In this document: positions 11,063 through 26,283 of the stretch, in pieces
Position numbering within the stretch: the first letter of the stretch is position 1
Layout of the letters: every line of letters starts with the position of its first letter
IMG/VR virus record: IMGVR_UViG_3300050821_013430
Location: 62,001 to 126,000 of that record
Strand: one strand, 5' to 3'
DNA length: 64,000 bases
Translations under genes and position numbers: made by a program
The notes under the pieces: generated by a model
Database searches by the model: none
Seen by the model: the letters and a program-made list of their open reading frames with translations, nothing else
Told to the model about the DNA's origin: nothing

Positions 11063-11072
11063 TGAGGATCTA

Positions 11073-11234: not shown

Positions 11235-11237
11235 ACA

Positions 11238-11474: not shown

Positions 11475-11482
11475 CTTATTCC

Positions 11483-11791: not shown

Positions 11792-11814
11792 AATGTCTTA
11801 CCTTTCTGAATAAA

Positions 11815-12207: not shown

Positions 12208-12232
12208 CTATGACCTCTCTACTTATGCCTAA

Positions 12233-13093: not shown

Positions 13094-13124
13094 ATATGTC
13101 TCCAAGTTTGACGTTTTATTATAT

Positions 13125-13985
13125 TCATTCATCACCCAACAGCAAATGCATTCTTTTTTCTTCACTATGTAAAGATAGATCAGCACGCTCCAATGTATCT
13201 ATTATCATTTTAGACAATTCTAATCCACTTCTCCAATCTTTTTTTCCATCAATCAATTGTAAAAACGTTTCAATCGAAGAAGCGAGCGGCAAAGTTCGAT
13301 CAATTTTTACCACTTTCCCATTATGTATCAGTTTGTCTTCTCGTATATCATCATATATAATCGTTTCTTTTCCTCCAAAAACCTCAAAATAACGACTTTT
13401 ATTTTGGGCTCCATTACCAATTTGAGCACTTACTCTGACTCCACCTATATTGAGGTGCAAATCAAATATCTCGCCCTGAGAATGCCACGAAGGCATTCGT
13501 GCCGCATAATCAATTGATGTTTGATTATTTAACAAAGCAAAACACATCGACAGATCGTGAGAACCATAATCAAATAAAGACGAATAATCTCGGAAGGGGC
13601 CGTTTCCATAGCCTCTGGTAAAAATACCATCAATTCGATCCCAAGACAGAACAATTTCTCGTAATTTGAGGAAGGCGGGAGCAAAAATATGTTGATGGTT
13701 GACCAAAATAGGAGCAGAAAACCTATCCAATATTTTTATCTCGTTTAGAGAAAGAGCCAATGGCTTTTCTACCATCACGGGTACATTACGCTCTAAAGCA
13801 TAATGAGCAATATCAATATGAGATTGTGGCGGAGTAGCGATAATCACCCCGTCTGGCTGCTCATCCAATAAAGACTTCCAATTATGTCTAGTTGCAATTT
13901 GCAAAGAGACATCAGGAAAATCAGCAAGAGTAGAGACATAATTTCTACCCCAATGACCATTACCAATAAGTAAGATATTACTCAT
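13125..13985 (-). CDS. Gfo/Idh/MocA-family oxidoreductase
   Basis: IGNGHWG Rossmann motif, IATPPQSH, VEKP. Confidence 0.85.
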   Translation of the reverse strand: MSNILLIGNGHWGRNYVSTLADFPDVSLQIATRHNWKSLLDEQPDGVIIATPPQSHIDIAHYALERNVPVMVEKPLALSLNEIKILDRFSAPILVNHQHIFAPAFLKLREIVLSWDRIDGIFTRGYGNGPFRDYSSLFDYGSHDLSMCFALLNNQTSIDYAARMPSWHSQGEIFDLHLNIGGVRVSAQIGNGAQNKSRYFEVFGGKETIIYDDIREDKLIHNGKVVKIDRTLPLASSIETFLQLIDGKKDWRSGLELSKMIIDTLERADLSLHSEEKRMHLLLGDE

Positions 13986-14928
13986 AACGATTTCTGTATT
14001 CTAGATACCAATTTACACACTCAAAAAGACCTCTATCAAAATCGAATATAGGCCTCCATCCTAATGCCTTGATTTTAGAGCAATCCACCGAATACCTAAA
14101 ATCGTGGCCGGTCCGGTCTTTGATAAAATCAATGGCCGGATTTTCGACCTTCAGGATTTGACTGATTCGCTTCACGACTTCCAAATTGGTCAGCTCCACC
14201 CCAGAGCCAATGTTGTAGGTCTCATTGGCGGGAGCCTTTTCCACGATCTTCATAATGGCCGAGCAGTTGTCCTTGACATAGAGCCACTCCCGCATCTGCT
14301 TGCCCTCTCCGTGAATAGGGATCGGCTTGCCATCCATAATCGATGTGATGACCTTCGGGACCAAGTTGCGAGGGGGTTGGCGGGGCCCGTAGTTATTGCA
14401 GCAGCGCGTGATGTTGTATGGTAGTCCGTGAGTTTGATTAGCGGCGACCACCAACATTTCAGCACAGGCTTTGGAGGCGGAGTATGGGTTTCTGGGTTTG
14501 AGGGGTGAGTGTTCGGTCCAGGACGGATCACCGATCTTGAGTTGGCCGTATATCTCATCGGTTGATATCATAATGAACCGCTCCACTTGATACTTGAGCG
14601 CCAGATCTACCATCACCTGGGTACCCACGATGTTGGAATGAACGAAAGGCTTGGCGCTTCGGATCGAGTCATCCACGAAACTCTCGGCTGCTCCGTGAAT
14701 GACGATGTTGGGCCGTTCCAGAGCAAATACGTTGTCCATAAAAATCTCATCTGCAATATCACCCATATAGAAAGTGTGGCCAGTATTGCGATAGATGTTC
14801 TTGAGGTTGTAGGGGGCGATGATTTTATCAACGCTCGAGAATTTGTAGTCCAGGCGATCATCAAAGACCTTCCTAATAAAGTTGCTGAAGATAAACCCGG
14901 CCGAGCCGGTCACGAGCACGCGTTTCAT
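13978..14928 (-). CDS. rfbB: dTDP-glucose 4,6-dehydratase
   Basis: VTGSAGFI, AAESFVDDS, ISTDEIYG, PYSASKA, NNYGP, DRTGHDFRY. Confidence 0.9.
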   Translation of the reverse strand: MKRVLVTGSAGFIFSNFIRKVFDDRLDYKFSSVDKIIAPYNLKNIYRNTGHTFYMGDIADEIFMDNVFALERPNIVIHGAAESFVDDSIRSAKPFVHSNIVGTQVMVDLALKYQVERFIMISTDEIYGQLKIGDPSWTEHSPLKPRNPYSASKACAEMLVVAANQTHGLPYNITRCCNNYGPRQPPRNLVPKVITSIMDGKPIPIHGEGKQMREWLYVKDNCSAIMKIVEKAPANETYNIGSGVELTNLEVVKRISQILKVENPAIDFIKDRTGHDFRYSVDCSKIKALGWRPIFDFDRGLFECVNWYLEYRNRYE

Positions 14929-15836
14929 TGGCCATCCCATCCTTGCAAAGCGTCCTCAATGGATTTAAGGTAGGACGCGTGATGTTGATTGAAGCCCCAT
15001 TGATAGTAATCCGGCACCGCCTGGCACACCTTCGTTAGAGCATCTTCGGAGGTCATCTTGTTGCATCCGCGAAGAACGGCGTAGGCAAAATGCGGACTTC
15101 GTGAGGCACCAACGTGGCAATGGAGGTAAATGGGCCGATCCGAATGCTGTTGAGCAAACTTGACTGCCTGCCTAACGTAATCGGCAGGAAAAGGATTGCC
15201 ATCATCCTGAACCGGCAGTTCCAAGAGGTTATCGATCTGCTTGTCCTTGTCCGTATGACCATCTACGTTGATCACGGATCCGATACTGAAATCTCTGGTC
15301 AGGTGTTCCCAGTCCTTTTGGTCGCAAATGTTGCCACCCACCAGGAGATGGGGCGCTACCCAATACCTTGCCATCGTTGGATTAGTAGGACTAACGGTAT
15401 TGATGTAGGTTTCTGCCACCCCCACGTTCAGTTCGAGTAGTTGTCGGATAAGATAATCGGCTTTGCCAGCCATTACCTCCGGCTTGCTAAAAAGATGAGT
15501 AGCACCCGCGACTATCATATTGGCGTTATTCTGCTGGATGCCGGAGAAAGTGATGACTGGTATGGATAAGTTCTTGCTTTTCAACCAGTTGAGCAGGTCA
15601 ATGCCATTACCCTGCGGCATATCGTGATCCAAAATGATGACGTCAATCTTGACGCTGCTGATGATAGCCGCGGCTGCGAGGGCACCCGGCACCACGCTGA
15701 ATTGCACCTCGGTCTGGGGCCCAAAAATGCTGGCGAAATGCTCGATAACGCCCTTTTGGCAGTGGAGATCGTCCTCACAAATTAGGACGTGCTTCTGGGG
15801 ATATTTGAGCCGGTTGATATGTCTGAACTGGAACAT
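14925..15836 (-). CDS. Response-regulator receiver domain fused to a dual-specificity phosphatase
   Basis: VLICEDD, ILDHDMPQGNG, ITFSG and SKP receiver motifs, then LHCHVGASRS (CX5R). Confidence 0.8.
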   Translation of the reverse strand: MFQFRHINRLKYPQKHVLICEDDLHCQKGVIEHFASIFGPQTEVQFSVVPGALAAAAIISSVKIDVIILDHDMPQGNGIDLLNWLKSKNLSIPVITFSGIQQNNANMIVAGATHLFSKPEVMAGKADYLIRQLLELNVGVAETYINTVSPTNPTMARYWVAPHLLVGGNICDQKDWEHLTRDFSIGSVINVDGHTDKDKQIDNLLELPVQDDGNPFPADYVRQAVKFAQQHSDRPIYLHCHVGASRSPHFAYAVLRGCNKMTSEDALTKVCQAVPDYYQWGFNQHHASYLKSIEDALQGWDGQ

Positions 15837-17261
15837 TTATGAACCCTTCCTTGTTAGCTCTTCGATTGCGGGAAACCACGGCATGCCGCGATCGATACCA
15901 CCACACGACTGACATCTGGCCCCGCCTATCTTGATGCCATTGAAACTGCCGCTATATTTGGGGTCTTCGATCCAAGGGCCATCGCTACAAGTGCAGGTCA
16001 TGTTCTCGCAATATCGCTGCACCTTCAGCTCCGGCAAAGGCACAATGAAAGTGGGATACCTGACATTTTTGAAATGCTGATACCACTGCTGCTGACACTT
16101 TTCGATTATTGAGTCCGCAAAGTTCCAGGCGAGGATCAATAACACATCCGGCTTGCGTTCCAAAATGGCTTGTGAGGTATAGATGAGAATATGCTTACCG
16201 GGAGTAAATGTTCCTTGTTTCAAGGGAGCATCATCTACCGCGAAATCAATCCATTCTTCTTTGATCCCAAGAGCATACATTAAGGTCGTAGCTTTAGCCG
16301 GGGCGCCGTAGATGGCGATGGATTTATCCTGATCTCTCAGATCTCGGAGTTTTTCACGAAGTTCTAGTCCTAGATACTTGATATTGTGGGCCAGTTGCTT
16401 GACCTTCTTCTCAATGTCTTGTTCTTGTTGCGGCAAATCACCTAGTCCGGCGCTTAATGCACCACGATACCATCTACCAAGGCCGAAATCTTCTTGGCAA
16501 CGAACAAAAACTCGAATTGATCCCCCGTGATTTGGAATTCTTTCGACATCAAACAAATCCAAACCGTGGCCGGTAAAAAATGGGCGCAAGGGCCCTACGG
16601 TATGGTAAGAGCTGTGCTCGTGGTAAATAGTGTCGAATAAGGTATGGTCGCACACATCAGCGAAATAGGACACCTCGAACACGAATACTCCCTGCGGAGC
16701 CAGCAGCTTCTTGACACCCTTGGTAAAGTCAACCAGGTCGGGGCAATGGGCAAACACGTTGTTGGCCACGATCAAATCAAACTGACCGTGTTCCTTGAGC
16801 ATCTTATCGGCATAGGCCTCGGTGAAAAACTCCGTGATGGTCTCGATGCCCTTCTTGTTAGCTTCGTCCGCGATGTTCCGGGCTGGATCGATGCCCATGA
16901 CCTTCATTCCCAGATCCTTGAAGTGCTGCAACATCACTCCGTCGTTGCTGGCAATTTCCAGGATTTTGCTGCCAGGCTTCAGATCAAACTTTTCGACCAT
17001 TGACACTGCATACTTACGAAAATGCTCCACATTGACGGGGGAGGTACCAGCCACATAATGGTAGTGGCGAAAAATCCGCTCCGGATCAATACTCTGATTG
17101 AGCTGGTAGTGCCCACAGGAGGCGCAACAACACACTTGTAGCGGAAAAAGGTCCTGGGGGCTGGGAGAGGACAAAAATTCGTTAGCAAGCGGCGTGGAGC
17201 CTAAATCTAATACCGGTGCGCCGAGGGGGCCCTTGCACAATCTGCACTTATCAGTCTTCAT
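15837..17261 (-). CDS. NDP-hexose C-methyltransferase (SAM-dependent)
   Basis: CRLC..LGSTPLAN..CASC, EIASNDG, NNVFAH, YHEH, HGGSIR, YGAPAKA, LAWNF. Confidence 0.9.
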   Translation of the reverse strand: MKTDKCRLCKGPLGAPVLDLGSTPLANEFLSSPSPQDLFPLQVCCCASCGHYQLNQSIDPERIFRHYHYVAGTSPVNVEHFRKYAVSMVEKFDLKPGSKILEIASNDGVMLQHFKDLGMKVMGIDPARNIADEANKKGIETITEFFTEAYADKMLKEHGQFDLIVANNVFAHCPDLVDFTKGVKKLLAPQGVFVFEVSYFADVCDHTLFDTIYHEHSSYHTVGPLRPFFTGHGLDLFDVERIPNHGGSIRVFVRCQEDFGLGRWYRGALSAGLGDLPQQEQDIEKKVKQLAHNIKYLGLELREKLRDLRDQDKSIAIYGAPAKATTLMYALGIKEEWIDFAVDDAPLKQGTFTPGKHILIYTSQAILERKPDVLLILAWNFADSIIEKCQQQWYQHFKNVRYPTFIVPLPELKVQRYCENMTCTCSDGPWIEDPKYSGSFNGIKIGGARCQSCGGIDRGMPWFPAIEELTRKGS

Positions 17262-17690
17262 CTAAAACTCCTCTCGCACTAAATCGGCTTCGTGATGTTC
17301 GTGGTCCTTGATGCCGTGTCCCAGGGAAATCAACACCGTATCCTCCAGGAATACCGTGCGATGCACGTAGTATGGGCGAGTGAAAACCATCTCACCCGCC
17401 TTGACGACGATCGGCTCTCGATTAGCCTTTTCGGGTGATGTATCCACCGATCGCTCGTAGTATTCCATCGATCCCGATATGACGAAAAGGTAGTGCCAGT
17501 TCTCGTGATGCCAATGATTGCTACGTACCGATCCTGCCTTACTGGTAATGATAGCCACGCTGGTAATAGGTGATAAGAGTAGATTTTGGATGACACCAGT
17601 AGCATTCACAAAGGGCGCGTCCAATGGTACAAGAATATCTGCCGGAAACTCTCCACGACTAACCAAATCTCCATATTCTCTATTGTTCAT
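17262..17690 (-). CDS. Cupin-fold sugar epimerase/isomerase
   Basis: RSNHWH..WHYLFVISG..YVH cupin motifs, within the sugar operon. Confidence 0.7.
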   Translation of the reverse strand: MNNREYGDLVSRGEFPADILVPLDAPFVNATGVIQNLLLSPITSVAIITSKAGSVRSNHWHHENWHYLFVISGSMEYYERSVDTSPEKANREPIVVKAGEMVFTRPYYVHRTVFLEDTVLISLGHGIKDHEHHEADLVREEF

Positions 17691-18652
17691 CTTGCATCCT
17701 TATCTGACTTTACATACCAGTCTATTGTCTTTTTCAGCCCTTCTTGCAGTTCTGTCGTTGCCTCCCAATCCAATAGCTCCTTGGCTCGGCTTGTGTCCAA
17801 AAGCCTTTTTGGCTGACCATCTGAAACACTGCCATCGAATACTACCCTGCCCTGATACTCCGTTAGCTCTTTGATCAGGTGGGTCAGGTTCTTGATGCTA
17901 ATATCTTGTCCTACTCCCAGATTGATTGGTAAGTCGTTGTCAAAACGACTTGCGATTGCTTTGACAAGAACCTCAGCGGTGTCGCCAGCATAGAGAAACT
18001 CCCGAGTGGCATTGCCAGTACCCCAGCATTTGACCTCGGGTGCATTGGTATGCTTGGCATCTATGAACTTACGGATCAATGCCGGAATGACGTGGCTGTT
18101 GGTTAGATCGAAGTGATCGTACGGACCGTACATATTTACTGGAATTAGATGTGCCCCTTTGATACCATATTGGACTCGATATGTTTGCCCCAACATCATC
18201 AGCGTTCGTTTTGCTTGTGCGTATGGGAAATTGGTTTCTTCAGCGGCACCGTTCCAAATATTATCCTCCTTGAAAGGAACTGGACAGTATTTAGGATAGG
18301 CACACACTGAACCTAATGAATAGACATAAGGAACCTTCATCGTTCGTGCTGCTTCATAGACATTGAGTGCCATTTGAGTGTTATCTCGCAGGAAATCAGC
18401 CGGACTGTTCTTATTGGCTAGAATCCCGCCGCACTTCGCGGCCATATGCAGAATAGCAGTAGGTTGATATTGTCGAATGGCCCACCAAATATCGGCACCG
18501 TGATCGCATTCATTGCCGATATTTTGCGACGTTAGAATGTCCAAGTCTTTACTCTTTGGCGCCCAATATTCGATTTTAGCAGCATTCAATAACGGCAAAA
18601 GATGATGTCCGAGAAATCCATTGCCTCCCGTAATCAAAATGCGTTCTTTCAT
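17687..18652 (-). CDS. fcl: GDP-L-fucose synthase-like NDP-sugar epimerase/reductase
   Basis: AAKCGGILAN, GSVCAYPK, YAQAK, NMYGPYD, SHVIPALIRK, WGTGNATREFLY. Confidence 0.8.
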   Translation of the reverse strand: MKERILITGGNGFLGHHLLPLLNAAKIEYWAPKSKDLDILTSQNIGNECDHGADIWWAIRQYQPTAILHMAAKCGGILANKNSPADFLRDNTQMALNVYEAARTMKVPYVYSLGSVCAYPKYCPVPFKEDNIWNGAAEETNFPYAQAKRTLMMLGQTYRVQYGIKGAHLIPVNMYGPYDHFDLTNSHVIPALIRKFIDAKHTNAPEVKCWGTGNATREFLYAGDTAEVLVKAIASRFDNDLPINLGVGQDISIKNLTHLIKELTEYQGRVVFDGSVSDGQPKRLLDTSRAKELLDWEATTELQEGLKKTIDWYVKSDKDAR

Positions 18653-19440
18653 CGTTTCCTCTTGAATAAGTCTATCGTCTTTCTGATACCAGCATCCAAG
18701 GATGTTTGAGCTTCACAAATGAGTGATTTATTCGTAATCACCAAGGAACTGCCACTTTTGGTGCCTCGTACTATCTGGCAGCCGGTATGTTTAGAGACCA
18801 GCTCCGCTACCTCATATATCGAGTTCCACTGCAATGTGCTGGCGTCAAATACGCCTTTATATTCAAATGATAAGTGTAGGGCCCTACAAATATCGTCAAT
18901 ATGAATAAACTGTCTTTTTTCTTGACCATCGGTCATCATTCGTATGATATCATTAGACAATGCTTGATGAACGAAATCAGCAACTACATGGCTCTTGACA
19001 GACTGCGGCTCATAGGCCCCATAAACGTTCCAAAACCGTACCACCCGGCCCCCATTGAGTTGTGTCCAAACCTCACCAAGCCGCTTTAGGACGCCGTAAA
19101 CGGTATCGCAGTCCTCGGCGAGCTGACTGGAAACGAAAACGAAAGGGATATCGATCAGCTGATCCATCGAGTTGGTTAGAATTCTGATATTCCACTCAAG
19201 TTGTTCTTTTTGAGTATTAGGATCATAGAGGTAGTTGGCTCCACCAACTTTGAAGGCTAAAAAATAAACGCGATCAATATTAACCAGGGGTAAGGTGAAA
19301 AATCTGCAATCCTCATGCTCATTTCTGATGATATCGTATTCAATAACATTTTCTCCAAGGTCGCGAAGATAATGGCATAGGTATCGACCGACGAAACCAG
19401 AAGAGCCAAGAACAAGGTTATTCATCTTACTTATGCACAA
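18649..19440 (-). CDS. NAD-dependent epimerase/dehydratase
   Basis: GSSGFVG, YGVLK, NVYG, RQFIHIDD. Confidence 0.85.
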   Translation of the reverse strand: MCISKMNNLVLGSSGFVGRYLCHYLRDLGENVIEYDIIRNEHEDCRFFTLPLVNIDRVYFLAFKVGGANYLYDPNTQKEQLEWNIRILTNSMDQLIDIPFVFVSSQLAEDCDTVYGVLKRLGEVWTQLNGGRVVRFWNVYGAYEPQSVKSHVVADFVHQALSNDIIRMMTDGQEKRQFIHIDDICRALHLSFEYKGVFDASTLQWNSIYEVAELVSKHTGCQIVRGTKSGSSLVITNKSLICEAQTSLDAGIRKTIDLFKRKR

Positions 19441-19441
19441 T

Positions 19442-20275
19442 TTACGGACTTATTGCAATATCGTATCTTGCACTGAGATAACTTTGAACAAGTATCATAT
19501 TACTATAAGCAAGAATGCTGTTATATATGAGCACCTCAACTATTTTACCATTGAGGAAATGGCCTGACATATATTGATTATCGGCGCCCAACCAAACACC
19601 ATCTGTACCAGCACCTACGGAACCAGCTCCTACTGTGCCTGTTAGATTTGGTGTAGTTTTGCTGATACCAATCGCTGAACTTGCGCCATCATATTCGCCA
19701 CGAAATACTTCTGGGTATCCAGTTGCCGATATTGAGGTAGTAAGATTGGTGCCTCCTGCCAAAATAGAATATACCCCATCATTATTGTATAGCCAAGGGT
19801 TTGTTACCGTATCACCACCAACAAATATCTCAGCGCCACCTCCGACGGTTCCATCATCATTAGCAACAACAAAAATGGTATATGGTTGTGCTACTGGTGA
19901 AGCCCAAGTTCCAGTAGACTTCATATATTGAGATAAAGAATCCCTAAAACTAACTGATGGAAAACCGGCATACATATTATCTGAGGCGTTGAATGTTGGA
20001 TTAGCGCTACCACCCGCTCCCACCATATTTTTATTTGAATCACCGGTGCCGCTCTGGTCTGCCCAGCCCGTAACCTGATTACCGGACAATGTAATACCCA
20101 TATCGCTTCGCAACCACAACTGCAGTCCTGAAATGCTGGTTGGTGAGAAAAGTGTTGGTAGCGTTGTAGGCACATACTCAGTGCCATTGAACTGCAATAC
20201 TTGCCCGGTGATTGGTGGCACTGATGAAACTGGAATACCCTGAATCGCTGTGACTCGTTTTTTAACATCGGACAT
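19442..20275 (-). CDS. Virion protein with LamG/concanavalin-A-like domain
   Basis: LQLWLRSD..VTGWADQSG..LNGKIVEVLIYN, with N-terminal AIQG module. Confidence 0.7.
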   Translation of the reverse strand: MSDVKKRVTAIQGIPVSSVPPITGQVLQFNGTEYVPTTLPTLFSPTSISGLQLWLRSDMGITLSGNQVTGWADQSGTGDSNKNMVGAGGSANPTFNASDNMYAGFPSVSFRDSLSQYMKSTGTWASPVAQPYTIFVVANDDGTVGGGAEIFVGGDTVTNPWLYNNDGVYSILAGGTNLTTSISATGYPEVFRGEYDGASSAIGISKTTPNLTGTVGAGSVGAGTDGVWLGADNQYMSGHFLNGKIVEVLIYNSILAYSNMILVQSYLSARYDIAISP

Positions 20276-20286
20276 GTTGTCTCCTT

Positions 20287-21153
20287 TTATACCTTACTAA
20301 GTATATTCCAAATACTACCATTAAATATAACAGTAATTCCGCCAAAATTAGTATTAATTACATAAGTAGAAGCGGCATCAATATTAACTCCACCTCCTGA
20401 TACTGTTAGATTATTAGTGGATGCAATACCAACGGAATCTTTAATTATATAAATATCTCCTGCCGATGGAGATGGCGGTAGTGTAATAGTAAATATTCCT
20501 GATGTCGTATCACCAAGAATAATATAATCATAAGCAGTTGAACGACCATTATTTATGGTATAATCTGATGTAATATTAACTATTTGACTAAATCGTAGTC
20601 CCGTACTATTAAATCTAATATTTTTGCCTGTCAAACCTATTTGGGCAACATCAGGATTAGTGGATGCGTTAAAAGCATCTAATACAATTTCTTGTGCATT
20701 ATCATGCCCATAACCAGTTGTTAAATAGATAGATGCCTGTCCTCCACCATTTTGTGCGCCAGCATCTAGTTGAATATTATTACCACCGGCAGAACTTGAG
20801 GTCGGGGCACAACCACTAAAAATATTAATCGGTCCATTGCCACCGCCTCCAACTTGATCAGTAGATATTGTTAAACCGCTTGTACCATTTGTGCTTTGTA
20901 TTAAAACAGCGCTAGCATCTACAGTACCACTGTTGCCAGTTAAACCTATAACTATTGGATTTGGATATGTTCCAGATAAATCACCTCCGGCGGGCCCATC
21001 TGGTATTCCACTTGGTGTTGGCAATGGTTTAGATTCCCACTCATCATTTGTATTAATCCAAGTCAATACATAACCATCTTCACTCGCGCCTAGTATTTCT
21101 CGTTTAACCTGATTTCCTTGAATTGCATAAACGATTTTTCCGACATCAGACAT
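20287..21153 (-). CDS. Virion fibre/adaptor protein
   Basis: AIQG..DGYVLTW module, GGDLSGTYPNP, C-terminal domain shared with 630..2309. Confidence 0.65.
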   Translation of the reverse strand: MSDVGKIVYAIQGNQVKREILGASEDGYVLTWINTNDEWESKPLPTPSGIPDGPAGGDLSGTYPNPIVIGLTGNSGTVDASAVLIQSTNGTSGLTISTDQVGGGGNGPINIFSGCAPTSSSAGGNNIQLDAGAQNGGGQASIYLTTGYGHDNAQEIVLDAFNASTNPDVAQIGLTGKNIRFNSTGLRFSQIVNITSDYTINNGRSTAYDYIILGDTTSGIFTITLPPSPSAGDIYIIKDSVGIASTNNLTVSGGGVNIDAASTYVINTNFGGITVIFNGSIWNILSKV

Positions 21154-21176
21154 TTTAATCTCCTTATGTTAAATAT

Positions 21177-21707
21177 TTATTTATGCGCATCAATCGCAAG
21201 TTCAAACCATACATTGTGGATTGAAATACGATCTACTTTATTAAATCCAACTGATGAAATAAGTTTTTTCAAACTTTTTTCTGTATAACCATAGAAATGA
21301 CTATCAGGTATAGAGTTTTGTTGGTGCATTTCATCTTGCTCTCCCCAAATCAATCTAGAATATTGATATTGGGCTTCGCCTTCGCTTGCTAACCAGAGTG
21401 GCATTGCCTTTGCCATATCTGGTACTGATAAACGCAATCGACCATTTGGCTGTAACACACGATGACATTCTTGCATTACAAATATAGCCTTCAATCGTAA
21501 TAGATGTTCGAAAAAATCACCCATCCAAATCTCTTCGATTGAATTATCAGATTCTCGTATACCTTGAGATATATCATAGCATTCAAAAAATCCATTGTTA
21601 GTATCAAAATCTTTGCAAATATCAATGCTTTTCCACCCGATATGATCCAAGGAGATCACATTCAGTGCTGCAAGGCCGCTTCTTCCTGATCCAAGATTGA
21701 GTTTCAT
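21177..21707 (-). CDS. Class I SAM-dependent methyltransferase
   Basis: MKLNLGSG, FFEHL, ECHRVLQPNG..SVPD. TAATG coupling to the upstream glycosyltransferase. Confidence 0.85.
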   Translation of the reverse strand: MKLNLGSGRSGLAALNVISLDHIGWKSIDICKDFDTNNGFFECYDISQGIRESDNSIEEIWMGDFFEHLLRLKAIFVMQECHRVLQPNGRLRLSVPDMAKAMPLWLASEGEAQYQYSRLIWGEQDEMHQQNSIPDSHFYGYTEKSLKKLISSVGFNKVDRISIHNVWFELAIDAHK

Positions 21708-23797
21708 TATATTTGTGCAACTTGAAGAATAACACCACGCATCTCGCGCAAACTCCAATCATTGACGGGATCACTGAAATTATTGGCTTGTTTGCGACGC
21801 CAAATAGGATAGTTAGACATATGATGTCTAATCCTTCGTGCGTGCGGCATCACAAATCTCGGATTGATAATATACACCTTATTGTCTTTATCTACAATCC
21901 AAGTGAAACCGAGTTTCTTGACCAAGATATCAGAAAAAACATTATCCTGACACAAATGTGCTCCGTCCAACTCTTCATCCCAGCCATTGACCTTAAGAGC
22001 GGCTTCTATCTTAAGGCTCTCGTTTTTAGCATTAAAAGCTTGATGATCTCCAGGACCATATGGCATAAATAATTTAGTATCAGCATTACCCATACTATCT
22101 AATGACAGGGCTTCTGGATCTTGATCGAATGGCTCCTTGAAAATACTCCACATTAAATGGTTTAACTTACCTGTAATAATATCACTCACAAATAAATCAG
22201 TATCTTCATTTTGATAAGGAGTAAAATCAGGATGTAATTCCGGTAAAGATTTATACTGGTGAGGACACATATAGCCCATATTTTCGGCTAAATTAATGTT
22301 GTGAAACTTAATATGTTTTTCCACACAATCTGTGGGTAAATAGGTATAATCAGTGATCATTAACACCAATGAAGCAGAGGCGTTTACAAAACCAGTATTA
22401 GTGGTATGTGCTAAACAGCTAATAGGAAACACATTTTTTATTGGTTCGACATGTTTAACTATGAAATCATATTTTTTGCTTTCTTGTGCTACAATATCTT
22501 TCCGATGCTTATAAATACCATCTACCAATATCAGTTCAAAGTTCTTGAAAGTTTGTCGCTCTAAACTTTTGAATACTATATCTAAACCGCCTGGGCGCAT
22601 CGTTGGCATAATAATAGAAATAGCTGGTGTCTTACTGCCACTGATATTTGGTATAGATAATGTATTACTGTGTTTTGGATTGTCTTCAATCAATTTACAC
22701 ATCTTATTAGCAATATTAGTCCAAAGATATTTTTGAGCAAACAATTTACATTTATCTCGGGCATTATTGGCAAAGGTTATATCAGTTAAAGCCTTTACTA
22801 CTCCCGCTGCGTACTCATTCAATTTTGTGGCTACTGGCATTTCAGTCATCAAACAGCCACTATGTCGATAGATACCACCAATACAATCAGCGGAACTAAT
22901 AGCTGGAATAGCGCCAGCCGCGTGAGCTTGCATTATACTCAAACTAAATCCCTCCGAAAACGCAACGGTATCTACTGGATAAAGTAGAACGGATGCTTCG
23001 CTCATTTGTCGTTTCATTTCTTCAACACTAACAGAGCCAATTTGTTCCACACCCATATTCTTCATTCGTTTTATTGCTTCACGGCAATAACGCAATCTAT
23101 GACCCAGTTCCGTAACGTGAGGATGATCGGTGGTAGAGTTAGGCTCAATTTTTAGTACAGGGCCTTCTTGAAAATGGTAGAATATTTTTAGACTAGCTTC
23201 TGGAACCTGTTCTTTGATTTTGGGAAAAGCCTGTAATGCCAAATGCAAACCACGATCTGCCGATGAGCAGAAAATCATCCGCCCTGGCACCTTTTTATTG
23301 TCTTCGTACCAAGAAGGATCACATCCTAATGCCAGCGTTTGCCATTTTTCGGGTTTGGGGGCCTGGCGCTGTAAATGTTTAGTGTGTTGATCACAAACTC
23401 CTAACCATAGATCTACATAATCATCATATCCTGACTGACAGTAAGTAAAATCATTAAGAAACTGCCAACAAATACGAAATGGTTTCTCATTGACACCACG
23501 AAGAGCGTCTGGTTCATTAATAGAGATCACTGCATCAAAACTCTCATCAATAACAGTATGCCGTTCAATGAAATTATATAGTTTGCATCCCTGCCAAATA
23601 TCTGGTTTATTATTAGGTTGGGCATTCTTGGTAAACATATGGATTTCGTGCCCAAGTTTTTGTAGCTCGCTGCTGATAATGCAAAAACTAAGATCTGTAC
23701 CAGTTAGTCCCCTACCACTTGTCCAAATATTATCGAACCAAAAATCAAGAGGGCGCGTCGATAAACTCCATTCGCCAAGTATGACTGCAATTTTCAT
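21707..23797 (-). CDS. Bifunctional glycosyltransferase (GT4-like + GT2-like)
   Basis: SSADRGL..FSEGFSLSIMQA (GT-B), then ISIIMPT..FELILVDG (GT-A). Confidence 0.85.
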   Translation of the reverse strand: MKIAVILGEWSLSTRPLDFWFDNIWTSGRGLTGTDLSFCIISSELQKLGHEIHMFTKNAQPNNKPDIWQGCKLYNFIERHTVIDESFDAVISINEPDALRGVNEKPFRICWQFLNDFTYCQSGYDDYVDLWLGVCDQHTKHLQRQAPKPEKWQTLALGCDPSWYEDNKKVPGRMIFCSSADRGLHLALQAFPKIKEQVPEASLKIFYHFQEGPVLKIEPNSTTDHPHVTELGHRLRYCREAIKRMKNMGVEQIGSVSVEEMKRQMSEASVLLYPVDTVAFSEGFSLSIMQAHAAGAIPAISSADCIGGIYRHSGCLMTEMPVATKLNEYAAGVVKALTDITFANNARDKCKLFAQKYLWTNIANKMCKLIEDNPKHSNTLSIPNISGSKTPAISIIMPTMRPGGLDIVFKSLERQTFKNFELILVDGIYKHRKDIVAQESKKYDFIVKHVEPIKNVFPISCLAHTTNTGFVNASASLVLMITDYTYLPTDCVEKHIKFHNINLAENMGYMCPHQYKSLPELHPDFTPYQNEDTDLFVSDIITGKLNHLMWSIFKEPFDQDPEALSLDSMGNADTKLFMPYGPGDHQAFNAKNESLKIEAALKVNGWDEELDGAHLCQDNVFSDILVKKLGFTWIVDKDNKVYIINPRFVMPHARRIRHHMSNYPIWRRKQANNFSDPVNDWSLREMRGVILQVAQI

Positions 23798-26283
23798 TGT
23801 GTGGCCTCTTTCAACTTGTTATGATTTCCAAATCTTGGATCACCATTGTAATAGCCCCGGCCCCCATCTCTGTAAGCGGTGGTTGGATAGTATGGCACAA
23901 TGGGATTGGTCTTCATACTCTCTATCAGATCATGAAACATAGCTTCCCAATCCTTGGCCAAAGTATCTAGTCCGAAATATTCCTTGGCATATTGCTGCAG
24001 CTTGGCTCTATCGGTATCATCCTCCTTGGTGAGGGCTTCAACGGTCGCTTGCACAAACTTGTCCTTATACTCGGGACTGGTCCATTCCCCTGGCAGGAGC
24101 ACGCCACGATCGGCTACCGTTTCATTGAGAGCGGCGATGGTAGATGAGATCATTCGTGTGCCTGCAGCCTGAGCTTCCATTGCAGATAGGCAAGAAGTCT
24201 CAGAAAACCAAGTTGAGTACAACCATGCACCGGCTGACAGGTATTCTTCTGCCAATTCTTGCTGATTTACTCGATCGTGATATACAACGCCCAATGGTTC
24301 CATTTCCTTGATCTTGGCCTTGAGGAAGTGGATCAGGTTCATTTGGTTCTGATCGTGCTTGGCTACAAACTCCCAGTTCTTGAAACCGTAGAACAGGTGA
24401 AGCGTCGCGGCGGGAACTCGCTCTTTGATCTTGGGCCATACCTCCAACAAGATCGGCCAGCTGCGGTCAGGGGAGCTTGAATTGACGCACTTGAAACGAT
24501 CGCGGGGGACTGTCTTGTCGAATCGGGTCAAATCGATCCCATTGCGCGTCACTACCACGTGCTCTGGATGCAAGTTGTGCCAGTTAGTTAGATTAGACTT
24601 ATGCCATTCAGAAAGAGCCAAAATTCTATCTGCCTTCAACAGCAGCTCATTGGTAGCATTAATAGCGAAGATGTCGTGCACCCAGAGTAGCTTCAGTTTG
24701 GCCTCAATGCCATACTGGTCTCCAAGCATAGCTGCGTTCCTGGAGACTACCAGAACATCGCAGGTCAGGTTCTGGTATAGATTGGAAGGGTAATATTCCA
24801 CCCCATCAAAAGTGCTGGCGATCCCGCAGCTGCAATAGACCCGAACCCTATTATCAAGGGCTGCCAATCGTTTGGCCATTTCCATAGCCATAGTTTCAGA
24901 ACCGCCCATACCAAACTTTTTGATCGTCTCGGGTGTCCAAATTTCTACTCCATCACCAAGTGCAAAAACAATATCTAACTTACCTTCTTTTAGAGGTACA
25001 ATGTTATTGATGATAGTTAGTCCGGGAATAGGTTGATTGTTGATGATCGCGGCTACCTGCTCTACACCAACTTGTGTTAGACTGCCGTTGTTTTTCAGGA
25101 CATTAGTGTTCTCTACTATCTTCTGTCGGGCTAGAAAGTCTTCATAGAGCCGTTTGTTGTTTAGGAAGTTGGGGTCATTGGGTTGCTTTTGTATTCCGAT
25201 ATTGACGCTATTCAATGCTCCCACCACATCGCCCAATTTATTGAGCGCTAGGTTGAGATACTTATGGATTTCGGAATCCCGTTCCAATGGATTGATGAAT
25301 AGTAGAGTTTTGGTTGGAGGAAGGTTTAGTCCTGCTTTGGCAAAATACGCGCAGCGTTCCCAATTCCGCATCTCCTGGGGTCCGCCCCGAGAAGCGAAGA
25401 AATAGAACATCCGAGCCAAAGCAAAATAACCTTCTCCCCAATTCTCTTTGATCTCAATAGACTTGAAAGCCCATTTGATACCATCGTCCAAGTTATTTTG
25501 GGCCTGGTAAATATCGACCAATTTGAGGCAAGCCATCACCCGCTCATCTTCCCAACCAGAAACTGAAACATACTTGGTTAGATGCTGAATAGACTCATCG
25601 ATCAGCCCGGCATTGGCGCACTCTAAACCCAAGTAATAGAGTTGGCGAGCATCACTATCGCCTACCTTCTCGTAATACTTTTTCAGGATCCGAAGATTAC
25701 GATCAGGCTCGTGCATCTTGGGACTGAATTGTCGGTGATGCTTGAACACTAAGTCTTCGCGAGGAATATGAGCTACTCTGACATTATCCTTTGGAATAAG
25801 GACCTCGTGCACGGGATTTACCCACTTATAGAAGTCCTTCTTGTAGAAGAGCCTTTCTCGATAGTGTTGTAGAGTGCATTGACCTAACTCATTATAGGCA
25901 TATTCATAAGGGAATAGATAGGAAATAGTGTCTAAATGGGTATAGTTCTTCTTGAAGTCTTCAATAATAAGAGGAAGATTTTGACATCCCTCAATGGTAT
26001 CATCTGCGTCACACCACAAAATCCAGTCTTTGGTTGCCAAATCGAACGATCTTTGGCGAGCTTGCGAAAAATCCTCAATCAGACCAGTGGTTGGATCATT
26101 GCAATCAGTATAAACCTCGAAAATATCAGCGTATTTCTTGGCTATTTCAGGTGTGTTGTCGGTAGACCCGGTATCGACAACTACCAACTCTTCTATATAG
26201 GGTCTGATAGATTGAAGGCACTTTTCCAGAAAAGGTTCATTCTTTACGATGATACAGAGGCTAACAGGGCTCTTTTCGGTCAT
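23794..26283 (-). CDS. Glycosyltransferase GT2-TPR-GT4 fusion
   Basis: SLCIIVKNE..VVDTGSTD..DADD..VHE (GT2), TPR helices, GGSET..SSPDRS..ETSCLSAMEAQAAG (GT4). Confidence 0.9.
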   Translation of the reverse strand: MTEKSPVSLCIIVKNEPFLEKCLQSIRPYIEELVVVDTGSTDNTPEIAKKYADIFEVYTDCNDPTTGLIEDFSQARQRSFDLATKDWILWCDADDTIEGCQNLPLIIEDFKKNYTHLDTISYLFPYEYAYNELGQCTLQHYRERLFYKKDFYKWVNPVHEVLIPKDNVRVAHIPREDLVFKHHRQFSPKMHEPDRNLRILKKYYEKVGDSDARQLYYLGLECANAGLIDESIQHLTKYVSVSGWEDERVMACLKLVDIYQAQNNLDDGIKWAFKSIEIKENWGEGYFALARMFYFFASRGGPQEMRNWERCAYFAKAGLNLPPTKTLLFINPLERDSEIHKYLNLALNKLGDVVGALNSVNIGIQKQPNDPNFLNNKRLYEDFLARQKIVENTNVLKNNGSLTQVGVEQVAAIINNQPIPGLTIINNIVPLKEGKLDIVFALGDGVEIWTPETIKKFGMGGSETMAMEMAKRLAALDNRVRVYCSCGIASTFDGVEYYPSNLYQNLTCDVLVVSRNAAMLGDQYGIEAKLKLLWVHDIFAINATNELLLKADRILALSEWHKSNLTNWHNLHPEHVVVTRNGIDLTRFDKTVPRDRFKCVNSSSPDRSWPILLEVWPKIKERVPAATLHLFYGFKNWEFVAKHDQNQMNLIHFLKAKIKEMEPLGVVYHDRVNQQELAEEYLSAGAWLYSTWFSETSCLSAMEAQAAGTRMISSTIAALNETVADRGVLLPGEWTSPEYKDKFVQATVEALTKEDDTDRAKLQQYAKEYFGLDTLAKDWEAMFHDLIESMKTNPIVPYYPTTAYRDGGRGYYNGDPRFGNHNKLKEATQ

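What the first reader, a model, noticed from the sequence alone, without database searches (positions are those of the whole stretch)
13125..19440. Pathway for a branched C-methyl deoxysugar
RfbB, an NDP-hexose C-methyltransferase, a cupin, two SDR epimerase/reductases and a Gfo/Idh/MocA enzyme are tightly coupled with overlapping stops and starts. This set suggests a 3-C-methyl-6-deoxyhexose (virenose/nogalose type). No 2,3-dehydratase is visible in the window, which argues against mycarose-type 2-deoxy sugars.
Basis: partly seen in the sequence, partly recalled or inferred. Interest (0 to 1): 0.6.

Follow-up and report, generated by a model that had tools for sequence, protein, structure and literature searches.

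The report
Huge-phage pathway for C-methyl deoxysugar
A 473-kb bacteriophage carries, next to its head, collagen-like fibre and glycosyltransferase genes, a conserved enzyme set that most likely builds a methyl-branched 6-deoxy sugar, a kind of sugar not so far reported from any virus.

Summary

The window lies in a 472,749-bp huge-phage record. Only four genes form a conserved unit: metal-type cupin, TylC3/MtmC-type C-methyltransferase, RmlB-type 4,6-dehydratase and Gfo/Idh/MocA oxidoreductase. About 15 related viral contigs (10 with an RmlB-type dehydratase) keep this order behind two glycosyltransferases. Most bacterial loci carrying the cupin keep it too, with a different SDR in the dehydratase slot.

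The two SDR genes (GDP-fucose-synthase-like and a short SDR) are an insertion found only in this phage. They probably serve a second sugar, using a Gmd encoded about 110 kb away.

The genome has no 2,3-dehydratase, nucleotidyltransferase or RmlC. A host-primed 6-deoxy, C-methyl-branched hexose that keeps its 2-OH is therefore the best reading. The methyl position (C-3 by homology) and the stereochemistry are untested.

The likely acceptor is a Thr-rich collagen-like fibre protein encoded just downstream of the head genes. This is a new variant of a known kind, of moderate interest.

The parts
13125..13985 (-). Gfo/Idh/MocA oxidoreductase, 286 aa. It is the only reductase of the conserved core and the proposed ketoreductase of the last step.
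   Evidence: PF01408 E 2e-11. GxGxxG, EKP and DxxxH are present, and G8, G10, W12, E73-K74-P75 and H143 are invariant in 32 homologues. AF2 model pLDDT 94. The closest structures are 3c1a (a Magnetospirillum orphan), GnnA UDP-GlcNAc 3-dehydrogenase (TM 0.84) and KijD10.
13978..14940 (-). RmlB-type NDP-hexose 4,6-dehydratase, 320 aa.
   Evidence: TIGR01181 scores 342.1 bits (cut-off 365.1). PDB dTDP-glucose 4,6-dehydratases match at E 3e-76 to 8e-63. GxxGxxG, the STDEIYG dehydratase motif and YxxxK are present. It is 55-80% identical in related phage loci.
14925..15836 (-). Response-regulator receiver fused to a dual-specificity phosphatase, 303 aa. It is an accessory insertion in part of the phage lineage.
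   Evidence: PF00072 E 8e-12; PF00782 E 2e-7, 31.0 bits, just under its 33.5-bit cut-off. The acidic pocket, D70, T/S and K118 of the receiver and the HCx5R phosphatase loop are present. The PDB match is the DUSP10 catalytic domain. Only 44 relatives were found, on the same contigs as the C-methyltransferase relatives. It is present in L008, L014/L016 and L034, is REC-only in L007, and is absent in L010 and L011.
15837..17261 (-). SAM-dependent NDP-hexose C-methyltransferase (TylC3/MtmC/TcaB9 family), 474 aa, with a Cys-rich C-terminal extension (about residues 415-474).
   Evidence: PF08421, class I methyltransferase and PF08484 domains. MtmC 4rv9 E 1e-77; KijD1 and TcaB9 E about 1e-58. The YHEH active-site motif aligns. 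Four N-terminal Cys are invariant, and the extension with a CxxxxxCxC...CxxC pattern is conserved in 11 phage homologues.
17262..17690 (-). Small cupin of the nucleotide-sugar type with a probable metal site, 142 aa. Proposed epimerase next to the keto group; a 3,4-ketoisomerase role is not excluded.
   Evidence: AF2 pLDDT 94.8. Foldseek top matches are the FdtD and FdtA 3,4-ketoisomerases, the CapF cupin domain (24-26% identity) and RmlC-type epimerases. The family profile matches CapF at E 5.5e-5. H59, H61, H66 and H110 are invariant and sit at the four canonical cupin metal positions.
17687..18652 (-). GDP-4-keto-6-deoxymannose 3,5-epimerase/4-reductase-like SDR, 321 aa. It is found only in this phage.
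   Evidence: NF047922 scores 262.9 bits (cut-off 500). E. coli GMER E 2e-55, with the Ser, Cys, Tyr, Lys and His catalytic positions conserved (residue roles from PMC3539893). There is no counterpart in related loci except L013, which is the same phage.
18649..19440 (-). Short extended SDR, 263 aa (258 aa from the ATG at 19425). Putative NDP-4-ketohexose reductase; found only in this phage.
   Evidence: PF01370 E 3e-17. A weak match to the WbcJ/CapF-type reductase N-domain (NF047837, E 2e-7). GxxGxxG and YxxxK are present. It is absent from relatives.
19442..21153 (-). Two fibre-like proteins (277 and 288 aa). They are part of the insertion specific to this phage.
   Evidence: PHROG virion structural protein (E 1e-9) and tail-fibre proximal subunit (E 1e-7). 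No Pfam match. Absent from relatives.
21177..21758 (-). Small methyltransferase-like ORF, 193 aa.
   Evidence: Weak Methyltransf_11 match (E 1e-3). It aligns to the methyltransferase domains that are fused to glycosyltransferases in relatives.
21707..23797 (-). GT-B glycosyltransferase, 696 aa. The N-terminal 371 aa are conserved in the phage lineage.
   Evidence: Weak PF00534 and PF13692 matches (E 1.5e-5 and 4.4e-5, 25.1 and 24.2 bits, both just under their cut-offs). It is 40-58% identical in L007, L008, L010 and L011 at the same position.
23794..26283 (-). Two-domain glycosyltransferase (GT2 plus GT4/GT1), 829 aa.
   Evidence: PF00535 E 2e-15 and PF13439 E 1e-9. phrog_13126 E 4e-40. It is 58-64% identical in relatives. 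It carries the only GT2 domain above the Pfam cut-off in the genome; the one other, sub-cut-off GT2 match lies in the adjacent 696-aa GT.
26359..28416 (-). Protein with a pectate-lyase-like beta-helix domain, 685 aa. Probably a fibre or spike.
   Evidence: PF12708 E 4e-7.
28416..29372 (-). Collagen-like protein, 318 aa.
   Evidence: PF01391 E 2e-23. It has 165 residues of GXY, with Thr frequent at Y.
30195..37244 (-). Giant collagen-like fibre protein, 2349 aa. It is the proposed glycan acceptor.
   Evidence: PF01391 E 5e-134. It has 1029 residues in GXY runs, with Thr at Y in 153 of 343 triplets. The runs alternate with a 77-aa unit repeated 10 times. It is 60% identical to the giant protein ahead of the glycosyltransferases in L007.

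Best explanation
The block is a phage-encoded nucleotide-sugar pathway for a C-methyl-branched 6-deoxyhexose, joined to the machinery that uses the sugar.

The conserved core has four enzymes.
1. The RmlB-type dehydratase takes an NDP-glucose made by the host and forms NDP-4-keto-6-deoxyglucose. The substrate is probably dTDP-glucose, because the phage has no nucleotidyltransferase.
2. The TylC3/MtmC-type methyltransferase removes the proton from the carbon next to the keto group and adds a methyl group from SAM. By analogy with every solved relative this carbon is C-3.
3. The small metal-type cupin, closest in sequence to the Zn-dependent epimerase domain of CapF, inverts a neighbouring centre. 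That centre is C-5 if the methyl group goes to C-3.
4. The Gfo/Idh/MocA enzyme reduces the remaining keto group.

The product would be an NDP-6-deoxy-3-C-methylhexose that keeps its 2-hydroxyl. The two multi-domain glycosyltransferases directly upstream would transfer it, probably onto the Thr-rich collagen-like fibre proteins encoded between them and the head genes.

The GMER-like SDR and the short SDR are a later insertion in this phage, together with two fibre-like genes. They most likely supply a second 6-deoxyhexose of the GDP-L-fucose type from the product of the phage Gmd at about 186.5-187.5 kb of the genome. The REC-phosphatase gene is an accessory of this phage lineage with an unknown target.

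Shown here: gene content, catalytic motifs, folds, synteny, and absence of 2,3-dehydratase, RmlA and RmlC. Inferred: substrate, order of steps, methyl position, stereochemistry and acceptor.
For: Family assignments and intact catalytic residues:
- C-methyltransferase.
- Dehydratase with the TDE motif and YxxxK.
- Cupin fold and four invariant His.
- Gfo with EKP and DxxxH.

Whole-genome absences:
- No NTP_transferase.
- No 2,3-dehydratase.
- No RmlC.

Conservation:
- The order GT2/GT4, GT1, cupin, C-methyltransferase, (REC-DSP), RmlB-type SDR, Gfo is conserved at 36-80% protein identity in L007, L008, L010, L011, L014-L016, L034 and L093.
- In 80 bacterial loci that hold the cupin, 73 have the C-methyltransferase next to it and 48 have the Gfo gene about 2.7 kb downstream. 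These lie within polysaccharide clusters.

Link to the virion:
- The cluster is co-directional with, and directly downstream of, the major head protein, a virion structural protein and collagen-like proteins.
- The giant collagen-like protein has Thr at the Y position in 153 of 343 triplets.
- Both GT2-domain matches in the genome lie in this cluster.

Second sugar:
- The phage Gmd scores 417.6 bits, above its cut-off.
- The GMER-like SDR keeps the catalytic residues.
- The SDR pair is absent from all relatives.
Against: - No biochemical data exist for any protein of this cassette.
- The solved relatives of the methyltransferase act on 2,6-dideoxy or 3-amino substrates, not on a 2-hydroxy sugar.
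- The dehydratase and the GMER-like SDR score below their NCBIfam cut-offs.
- All sugar-acting structural neighbours of the Gfo enzyme (GnnA, KijD10, GenD2, KanD2, DgpA) work at C-3, not C-4. This fits a 3-keto route better.
- The top fold matches of the cupin include 3,4-ketoisomerases.
- In most bacterial versions the SDR in the cassette lacks the dehydratase Asp (SSSEIYG). The ancestral substrate may therefore differ.
- The acceptor is inferred only from gene order and from analogy with glycosylated collagen-like proteins.
- The host is unknown.
Confidence: 0.6

Rival explanations
1. 3-keto route. The cupin is a 3,4-ketoisomerase that turns NDP-4-keto-6-deoxyglucose into the 3-keto isomer. 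The methyltransferase then methylates C-4 or C-2, the carbons next to the 3-keto group. The Gfo/Idh/MocA enzyme acts as a 3-ketoreductase. The product would be a 4-C- or 2-C-methyl 6-deoxyhexose.
For: The top Foldseek matches of the cupin are the FdtD, FdtA, QdtA and WlaRA/B 3,4-ketoisomerases. Every sugar-acting structural neighbour of the Gfo enzyme oxidises or reduces C-3: GnnA, KijD10, GenD2, KanD2 and DgpA. The best NCBIfam match is UDP-GlcNAc 3-dehydrogenase. In relatives the Gfo enzyme is the only reductase of the core.
Against: No member of the TylC3 family is known to methylate C-4 or C-2 of a 3-keto sugar (my own knowledge). The known ketoisomerases work without metal through two His residues, whereas this cupin keeps all four canonical metal positions as His. 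Its sequence is closest to the CapF epimerase domain (24-26% identity against 12-18% for the ketoisomerases).
Confidence: 0.12
2. Noviose-like route. The cupin epimerises C-3, the methyltransferase methylates C-5 to give a gem-dimethyl group, and a reductase finishes at C-4. This parallels NovT, NovW, NovU and NovS.
For: The enzyme set has the same four types: dehydratase, cupin epimerase, TylC3-family methyltransferase and 4-ketoreductase. The CapF-type cupin is a C-3 epimerase (PMC5393024). C-3 epimerisation makes chemical sense only if C-3 is not the methylated carbon. The comparison with the noviose genes comes from my own knowledge.
Against: The best solved relatives (MtmC, KijD1, TcaB9) are all C-3 methyltransferases.
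Confidence: 0.1
3. One seven-gene pathway. The GMER-like SDR and/or the short SDR perform the epimerisation and 4-reduction of the methylated intermediate, as in the GDP route proposed for virenose in Coxiella. The Gfo enzyme has a side role.
For: In this phage the genes are translationally coupled. The in-silico virenose pathway uses Gmd, a TylCIII-like methyltransferase and GMER (PMC3539893). The phage encodes a Gmd.
Against: Relatives keep the cupin, methyltransferase, dehydratase and Gfo genes but lack both SDRs, so the core works without them. The SDRs arrived together with two fibre-like genes. A GMER cannot epimerise a quaternary C-3.
Confidence: 0.13
4. The sugar is not for the virion. 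The glycosyltransferases modify the host envelope (for superinfection exclusion or serotype conversion) or the phage DNA.
For: Phage glycosyltransferases are known to do both (reviewed in PMC12619734). A patatin-like lipase is conserved next to the cluster. The bacterial homologues of the cassette lie in surface-polysaccharide clusters.
Against: No flippase, polymerase or lipid-carrier transferase was found among the window genes scanned. The single ThyA-family gene scores as a typical thymidylate synthase and lies at 437 kb, far from the cluster. The cluster sits inside the head and fibre module, downstream of Thr-rich collagen-like proteins.
Confidence: 0.2

Closest known systems
TylC3 / EryBIII / MtmC / TcaB9 / KijD1 NDP-hexose C-3 methyltransferase pathways of actinomycete antibiotics (mycarose, tetronitrose)
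   Same: The methyltransferase has the same three-domain architecture (Zn domain, SAM domain, C-terminal domain) and the same YHEH active-site motif. MtmC matches at E 1e-77. In both, a 4,6-dehydratase supplies the 4-keto sugar.
   Different: There is no 2,3-dehydratase, so the 2-OH is kept. The epimerase is a small metal-type cupin, not an RmlC/TylK-type one. The reductase belongs to Gfo/Idh/MocA, not to the SDR family. The methyltransferase has an extra Cys-rich tail. The setting is a phage structural module, not a secondary-metabolite cluster.
Proposed virenose (6-deoxy-3-C-methylgulose) pathway of Coxiella burnetii (PMC3539893)
   Same: It uses a TylCIII-like methyltransferase acting on an NDP-4-keto-6-deoxyhexose with the 2-OH retained. 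Gmd and a GMER-type enzyme are also present in the genome. The product goes into a surface glycan.
   Different: The Coxiella scheme is itself untested. It has no cupin and no Gfo/Idh/MocA enzyme. Here the dehydratase in the cassette is RmlB-type rather than Gmd, and the GMER-like gene is not part of the conserved core.
L-noviose pathway NovT/NovW/NovU/NovS (own knowledge)
   Same: It uses the same four enzyme roles: 4,6-dehydratase, cupin epimerase, TylC3-family C-methyltransferase and ketoreductase.
   Different: NovU methylates C-5. NovW is an RmlC-type cupin and NovS is an SDR. Which carbon is methylated here is unknown.
CapF of Staphylococcus aureus (PMC5393024)
   Same: Its cupin domain is the closest solved sequence relative of the phage cupin. 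It is a Zn-dependent epimerase acting next to the 4-keto group of a 6-deoxy nucleotide sugar. The short SDR of this phage weakly matches the reductase half of the CapF/WbcJ family.
   Different: CapF is a single fused SDR-cupin protein that acts on UDP-2-acetamido sugars. Here the cupin stands alone, is always paired with a C-methyltransferase, and has His at all four metal positions.
Glycosylated collagen-like surface proteins: BclA of the Bacillus exosporium (own knowledge) and Mimivirus fibrils (PMC9614988)
   Same: These are collagen-like GXY proteins, with Thr-rich repeats in BclA, encoded beside dedicated deoxysugar and glycosyltransferase genes. In Mimivirus the virus makes its own nucleotide sugars to decorate the particle.
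   Different: The giant-virus glycan review does not mention any C-methyl sugar (0 occurrences). The present case is a bacteriophage, and its glycosylation is inferred, not shown.

Membership tests
TylC3/TcaB9-type NDP-hexose C-methyltransferase | N-terminal four-Cys zinc domain (Pfam Methyltransf_13) | tested here: met
   PF08421 E 1e-16. C6, C9, C46 and C49 are invariant in 14 homologues.
TylC3/TcaB9-type NDP-hexose C-methyltransferase | Class I SAM-binding domain followed by the C-terminal Methyltransf_14 domain | tested here: met
   PF13489 and PF08242, and PF08484 at E 1e-33. The alignment to MtmC is full length, residues 5-388.
TylC3/TcaB9-type NDP-hexose C-methyltransferase | Active-site Tyr-His-Glu-His motif, which holds the catalytic base | tested here: met
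   FDTIYHEH is aligned and identical in MtmC and invariant in the family. The role of these residues is from my own knowledge of the TcaB9 work.
TylC3/TcaB9-type NDP-hexose C-methyltransferase | C-methylation of an NDP-4-ketohexose at C-3 | not testable with these tools
   This needs an enzyme assay with LC-MS and NMR.
dTDP-glucose 4,6-dehydratase (RmlB) | NAD-binding GxxGxxG, the Thr-Asp-Glu dehydratase triad and YxxxK | tested here: met
   The sequence shows VTGSAGF, STDEIYG and YSASK.
dTDP-glucose 4,6-dehydratase (RmlB) | Score above the curated equivalog cut-off (TIGR01181) | tested here: not met
   342.1 bits against 365.1. It is close, but the nucleotide specificity stays open.
GDP-L-fucose synthase (GMER/Fcl) | Catalytic Ser, Tyr and Lys plus the epimerisation Cys and His | tested here: met
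   All five positions align with E. coli GMER. Residue roles are from PMC3539893.
GDP-L-fucose synthase (GMER/Fcl) | Score above the curated cut-off (NF047922) | tested here: not met
   262.9 bits against 500.
Nucleotide-sugar cupins (CapF cupin domain, FdtA/QdtA ketoisomerases, RmlC epimerases) | Small jelly-roll fold shared with these enzymes | tested here: met
   AF2 pLDDT 94.8. Foldseek probability 1.00 to FdtD, CapF, FdtA, QdtA and RmlC, with TM 0.57-0.67.
Nucleotide-sugar cupins (CapF cupin domain, FdtA/QdtA ketoisomerases, RmlC epimerases) | Membership of the RmlC Pfam family (PF00908), or a Pfam match to an FdtA-type family | tested here: not met
   The cupin gives no such Pfam match, and PF00908 finds nothing in the genome. 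PF14667 scores 27.8 bits, just under its 28.7 cut-off.
Nucleotide-sugar cupins (CapF cupin domain, FdtA/QdtA ketoisomerases, RmlC epimerases) | Metal site as in CapF | tested here: inconclusive
   His is invariant at the four canonical cupin ligand positions, which align with the Mn ligands of oxalate decarboxylase. Metal binding itself was not shown.
Gfo/Idh/MocA oxidoreductases | N-terminal Rossmann GxGxxG, the EKP motif and the Asp/His pair | tested here: met
   The fold gives TM 0.83-0.85 to 3c1a and GnnA.
Mycarose-type 2,6-dideoxysugar pathway | NDP-hexose 2,3-dehydratase (PF03559) paired with a 3-ketoreductase | tested here: not met
   There is no PF03559 match in the 472,749-bp genome. 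The 14 control genomes also lack the family, so the search had no positive control.
Response regulator with a phosphatase output | Receiver Asp pocket, phospho-acceptor Asp, Thr/Ser and Lys; HCx5R loop in the phosphatase | tested here: met
   Sequence read; Pfam; PDB.

The most novel reading that the evidence does not exclude
The cassette of metal cupin, C-methyltransferase and Gfo/Idh/MocA enzyme is a route of its own, uncharacterised in bacteria as well. It runs through a 3-keto intermediate and yields a branched sugar not yet described in nature, such as a 4-C-methyl-6-deoxyhexose. Huge phages use this sugar to coat collagen-like head fibres. The lineage-restricted REC-phosphatase ties the pathway to host phospho-signalling, for example by switching off host polysaccharide synthesis to free the nucleotide-sugar pool.
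Probability: 0.1. Interest if true: 0.8.

Novelty: new variant of a known kind. Interest (0 to 1): 0.55.

Why it matters
- C-branched sugars are known from antibiotics and from a few bacterial surface glycans. None has been reported from a virus: the 2022 review of giant-virus glycans never mentions one.
- Only 6 of 50,697 GenBank phage records hold a relative of this methyltransferase, one of them from a cultured phage, where the gene is annotated only as a methyltransferase-domain protein. In contrast, at least 598 IMG/VR contigs do. Branched sugars may therefore be a common, unexplored feature of virus surfaces.
- The same cassette occurs in most of the 80 bacterial loci examined, spread over diverse Proteobacteria, Acidobacteria, Elusimicrobia and others. 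It has no assigned function. Solving it once would annotate all these loci and give a role to the orphan structure 3c1a.
- For phage biology it offers a testable case of a bacteriophage that builds its own unusual glycan for a collagen-like fibre, parallel to Mimivirus fibrils and the Bacillus exosporium.

Tried and rejected
- blastn of the block against 50,697 phage records found nothing.
- Promoter and terminator scans of 11000-30500 gave counts close to those of shuffled sequence (42 against 41 promoter-like sites; 24 against 16 terminator-like sites, under 2 sd). They say nothing about transcription units.
- No tRNA genes lie in the window.
- PADLOC gave no defence-system match for the REC-phosphatase, Gfo or cupin proteins. 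Only the patatin matched phospholipase effectors.
- DNA hypermodification as the use of the sugar was considered and set aside. The only ThyA-family gene looks like a typical thymidylate synthase and is unlinked.
- I considered a split CapF (short SDR plus cupin). The short SDR is absent from relatives, and the 259-aa neighbour of the cupin in L007 shows no similarity to it, so this is not a conserved pair.
- A chimeric contig was considered because of the bimodal GC content. Several relatives lie on contigs of 427-462 kb, which fits a real genome of this size, but the question is not settled.
- I could not place the methyltransferase against known C-5 methyltransferases, because no reference sequence of one was available through the tools.

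Full report
**Where the window lies.** The window is bases 62001-126000 of a 472,749-bp IMG/VR virus record that CheckV rates as complete. Genes are densely packed, mostly on the minus strand, and read cleanly with the standard bacterial code. Upstream on the same strand lie a head-maturation-protease-like gene (54743-58393), the major head protein (42382-43401, phrog_2522 E 3e-80) and a virion structural protein (38573-40228). The region of the finding is thus the downstream end of a head and fibre module of a huge phage.

**Checking the observation.**
- Gfo/Idh/MocA, 13125-13985.
- RmlB-like 4,6-dehydratase, 13978-14940.
- C-methyltransferase, 15837-17261.
- Cupin, 17262-17690.
- GDP-fucose-synthase-like SDR, 17687-18652.
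- Short SDR, 18649-19440.

The junctions overlap by 8, 16, 4 and 4 nt or abut directly. It encodes a response-regulator receiver fused to a dual-specificity phosphatase. The receiver has the acidic pocket, the phospho-acceptor Asp, the Thr/Ser and the Lys, and the phosphatase has an intact HCx5R loop.

**The individual enzymes.**
- *Methyltransferase.* It is a full-length member of the TylC3/MtmC/TcaB9 family: Zn domain, class I SAM domain and C-terminal domain. It matches MtmC (4rv9) at E 1e-77 and KijD1 and TcaB9 at about 1e-58, and the YHEH active-site motif is identical. It carries about 60 extra C-terminal residues with a conserved multi-Cys pattern, shared by 11 phage homologues and absent from the roughly 400-aa forms.
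- *Dehydratase.* It has the NAD motif, the Thr-Asp-Glu triad and YxxxK. It matches solved dTDP-glucose 4,6-dehydratases at E 3e-76. It scores just under the TIGR01181 cut-off (342 against 365 bits), so the nucleotide carrier is probable, not proven.
- *Cupin.* Its sequence gives only marginal Pfam matches. With an alignment of 30 homologues the AlphaFold model is confident (pLDDT 94.8). The best PDB fold matches are all nucleotide-sugar cupins: the FdtD, FdtA, QdtA and WlaR 3,4-ketoisomerases, the cupin domain of CapF (24-26% identity, the highest), and RmlC-type epimerases. A family profile matches CapF at E 5.5e-5. Its alignment to oxalate decarboxylase places four invariant His residues (59, 61, 66, 110) exactly on the four canonical cupin metal ligands. 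The CapF cupin is a Zn-dependent epimerase acting next to a 4-keto group (PMC5393024). To my knowledge the ketoisomerases and RmlC need no metal.
- *Gfo/Idh/MocA protein.* It has the Rossmann motif, EKP and the Asp/His pair, invariant in 32 homologues. Its model (pLDDT 94) is closest to the orphan structure 3c1a from Magnetospirillum, then to GnnA (UDP-GlcNAc 3-dehydrogenase, TM 0.84-0.85). Further down come KijD10, GenD2, KanD2 and DgpA, all of which work at C-3 of a sugar.
- *GMER-like SDR.* It keeps the Ser, Cys, Tyr, Lys and His residues of E. coli GDP-fucose synthase (residue roles from PMC3539893).
- *Short SDR.* It has the cofactor and YxxxK motifs, and weakly resembles the reductase half of the WbcJ/CapF family.

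**What else the genome has and lacks.** The phage has no nucleotidyltransferase, no NDP-hexose 2,3-dehydratase (this search had no positive control) and no RmlC-type epimerase. It must therefore start from a host nucleotide sugar, and it cannot make a 2-deoxy sugar by the usual route.

It does have a genuine Gmd (417.6 bits, above the cut-off) at about 186.5-187.5 kb. Beside it lie a DegT-type aminotransferase, two methyltransferases and a PglD-like acyltransferase. This is a separate locus of the N-acyl-perosamine type. A third RmlB-like SDR lies near 13-14 kb, next to a tubulin/FtsZ-like gene.

**What is conserved.** Relatives of the methyltransferase (55-71% identical) lie mostly on long contigs of 140-470 kb. 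Four of them were read in detail, together with about ten IMG/VR loci. They show the same order: a giant protein, a GT2/GT4 fusion glycosyltransferase, a GT1-type glycosyltransferase, the cupin, the methyltransferase, sometimes the REC or REC-phosphatase gene, the RmlB-type SDR, the Gfo gene, and often the patatin and a cold-shock gene. Protein identities to the window are 36-80%.

The GMER-like SDR, the short SDR and the two fibre-like proteins at 19442-21153 have no counterpart in any of these loci. The one exception is L013, a second record of the same phage. They are therefore an insertion between the GT1 gene and the cupin, peculiar to this phage.

The cupin family also occurs in bacteria, with 322 loci in the species-representative genome collection. 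Of the best 80 loci, 73 have the methyltransferase directly downstream and 48 have the Gfo gene about 2.7 kb further on, with an SDR in between. One example, in Magnetospirillum sp. UT-4, lies among GT2 and asparagine-synthase-like genes typical of surface-polysaccharide clusters.

The SDR in the bacterial cassette is a different enzyme. It is about 27% identical to the phage dehydratase, and has SSSEIYG instead of STDE[VI]YG plus a YDESK motif. From my own knowledge this resembles the UDP-glucuronate decarboxylase type. The motif count for the first SDR after the methyltransferase is as follows:
- 9 phage loci have TDE and 3 have SSE.
- Of the bacterial loci, 43 have SSE, 3 have TSE and 2 have TDE. 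One of the two TDE loci (L093) is a mis-binned phage contig.

The phage lineage of the window thus has a variant of a widespread, uncharacterised cassette, in which an RmlB-type dehydratase occupies the SDR slot.

**Most likely mechanism.** Host NDP-glucose (probably dTDP-glucose) is dehydrated to the 4-keto-6-deoxy sugar. The methyltransferase forms the enolate next to the keto group and methylates it, at C-3 by analogy with all solved relatives. The metal cupin epimerises a neighbouring centre. This would be C-5 if C-3 becomes quaternary, which would give an L-series sugar. The Gfo enzyme, the only reductase of the conserved core, reduces the keto group. The product would be an NDP-6-deoxy-3-C-methylhexose with the 2-OH kept, the class that includes evalose, the nogalose and vinelose precursors, and virenose. 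Methyltransferase-like domains fused to, or beside, the glycosyltransferases suggest additional O-methylation.

**Likely acceptor.** The acceptor is inferred from position. The glycosyltransferases follow two collagen-like proteins (318 and 2349 aa). In the giant one, Thr occupies the Y position in 153 of 343 GXY triplets (GVT, GPT, GAT). Collagen segments alternate with a 77-residue unit repeated ten times at 83% mean identity. From my own knowledge, Thr-rich collagen-like repeats are the O-glycosylation sites of the Bacillus exosporium protein BclA. Mimivirus also decorates its fibrils with self-made sugars (PMC9614988). The two genes with GT2-domain matches in the genome are those of this cluster.

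**The two extra SDRs.** With the distal Gmd, the two extra SDRs most simply give GDP-L-fucose or a related 6-deoxyhexose, perhaps for the two fibre-like proteins that were inserted along with them.

**Weak points and rivals.** No enzyme of the cassette has been assayed anywhere. The C-3 bias of the structural neighbours of the Gfo enzyme, and the ketoisomerase matches of the cupin, keep a 3-keto route open, with the methyl group at C-4 or C-2. A noviose-like C-5 methylation is also compatible with the enzyme types. Use of the glycan on the host envelope or on DNA cannot be excluded. However, no envelope export genes were seen among the genes scanned, and the only ThyA-family gene is a distant, typical thymidylate synthase.

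**The REC-phosphatase.** This family has only 44 relatives in the 5.8-billion-protein word search, on contigs that also carry the methyltransferase. Related phage loci carry it at the same position (L008, L014/L016, L034). It is REC-only in L007 and absent in L010 and L011. Its target is unknown. From my own knowledge, tyrosine phosphatases in bacterial polysaccharide clusters control BY-kinases and sugar-nucleotide dehydrogenases, so control of host polysaccharide synthesis is one testable idea.

**Novelty.** The enzyme families are known, and the idea of a C-methyl deoxysugar is ordinary for actinomycetes. The combination is new:
- The cassette has unusual partners: a metal cupin in place of an RmlC-type epimerase, and a Gfo-type reductase in place of an SDR.
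- It sits inside the structural module of a huge phage, next to glycosyltransferases and collagen-like fibres.
- It is conserved across a phage lineage.

I found no paper describing a virus-encoded C-branched sugar. GenBank phages hardly contain the gene (6 of 50,697 records, one from a cultured phage), whereas IMG/VR holds at least 598 contigs with relatives. I rate it a new variant of a known kind, with interest 0.55.

**Not done.** The host is unknown.

Noticed in passing
window 14925-15836 (-): A REC receiver fused to a dual-specificity phosphatase sits inside the sugar operon. The family has only 44 relatives in the large protein search, all apparently on contigs of the same phage lineage. 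Some are about 465 aa long. In L007 only the receiver is present.
   Followed up: partly
G000:C1:186500-195200 (outside the window; locus L173:6509-15214): A second nucleotide-sugar locus: a genuine Gmd, a 369-aa zinc-finger protein, a DegT-type aminotransferase, two methyltransferases and a PglD-like acyltransferase. This suggests an N-acylated 4-amino-4,6-dideoxyhexose of the perosamine type. A Thg1-like tRNA-His guanylyltransferase lies nearby (L173:3741-4505).
   Followed up: partly
G000:C1:11971-15660 (locus L005): A third RmlB-like SDR (308 aa, TIGR01181 208 bits) lies directly beside a tubulin/FtsZ-like gene (TIGR00065 E 1.5e-13).
   Followed up: no
whole genome G000: GC content is bimodal: about 0.35-0.41 over 0-225 kb and 0.50-0.57 over 250-425 kb. 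All six tRNA genes lie in the high-GC half. A second IMG/VR record of 221 kb (classed as provirus, 52% complete) holds the cluster and the Gmd locus at 100% identity but not the region at 436 kb. Within the cluster, GC3 is 0.53-0.62 for the cupin, methyltransferase, REC-phosphatase and dehydratase, against 0.16-0.36 for the Gfo gene, the patatin and the neighbouring genes.
   Followed up: partly
window 30195-37244 (-): The 2349-aa collagen-like protein is built like beads on a string. GXY runs of 48-216 residues alternate with a 77-residue non-collagen unit repeated ten times (mean identity 83%), followed by a 329-residue domain and a C-terminal domain.
   Followed up: partly
loci L094-L172 (bacterial genomes), e.g. 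L119:7968-11637: A four-gene cassette (cupin, C-methyltransferase, an SDR with SSSEIYG and YDESK motifs, Gfo/Idh/MocA) is widespread in Proteobacteria, Acidobacteria, Elusimicrobia and others. It lies inside polysaccharide clusters and has no assigned function. The orphan PDB entry 3c1a (Magnetospirillum) is the closest structure to its Gfo member.
   Followed up: partly
window 15837-16025 (-), residues about 415-474 of the methyltransferase: A Cys-rich C-terminal extension (pattern CxxxxxCxC ... CxxC) is conserved in 11 phage homologues and absent from the roughly 400-aa forms. It may be an extra zinc ribbon.
   Followed up: partly
window 12233-13186 (-): A patatin-like phospholipase (PF01734 E 1e-30, with weak matches to CBASS and anti-phage lipases) is conserved directly downstream of the Gfo gene in several related phages.
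   Followed up: no
window 5313-6548 and 7983-9014 (-); L011:306-4664: Two LAGLIDADG/HNH-type homing endonuclease genes lie near the cluster. In a relative, the GT2/GT4 glycosyltransferase carries an intein-like insert (Hint_2 plus LAGLIDADG).
   Followed up: no
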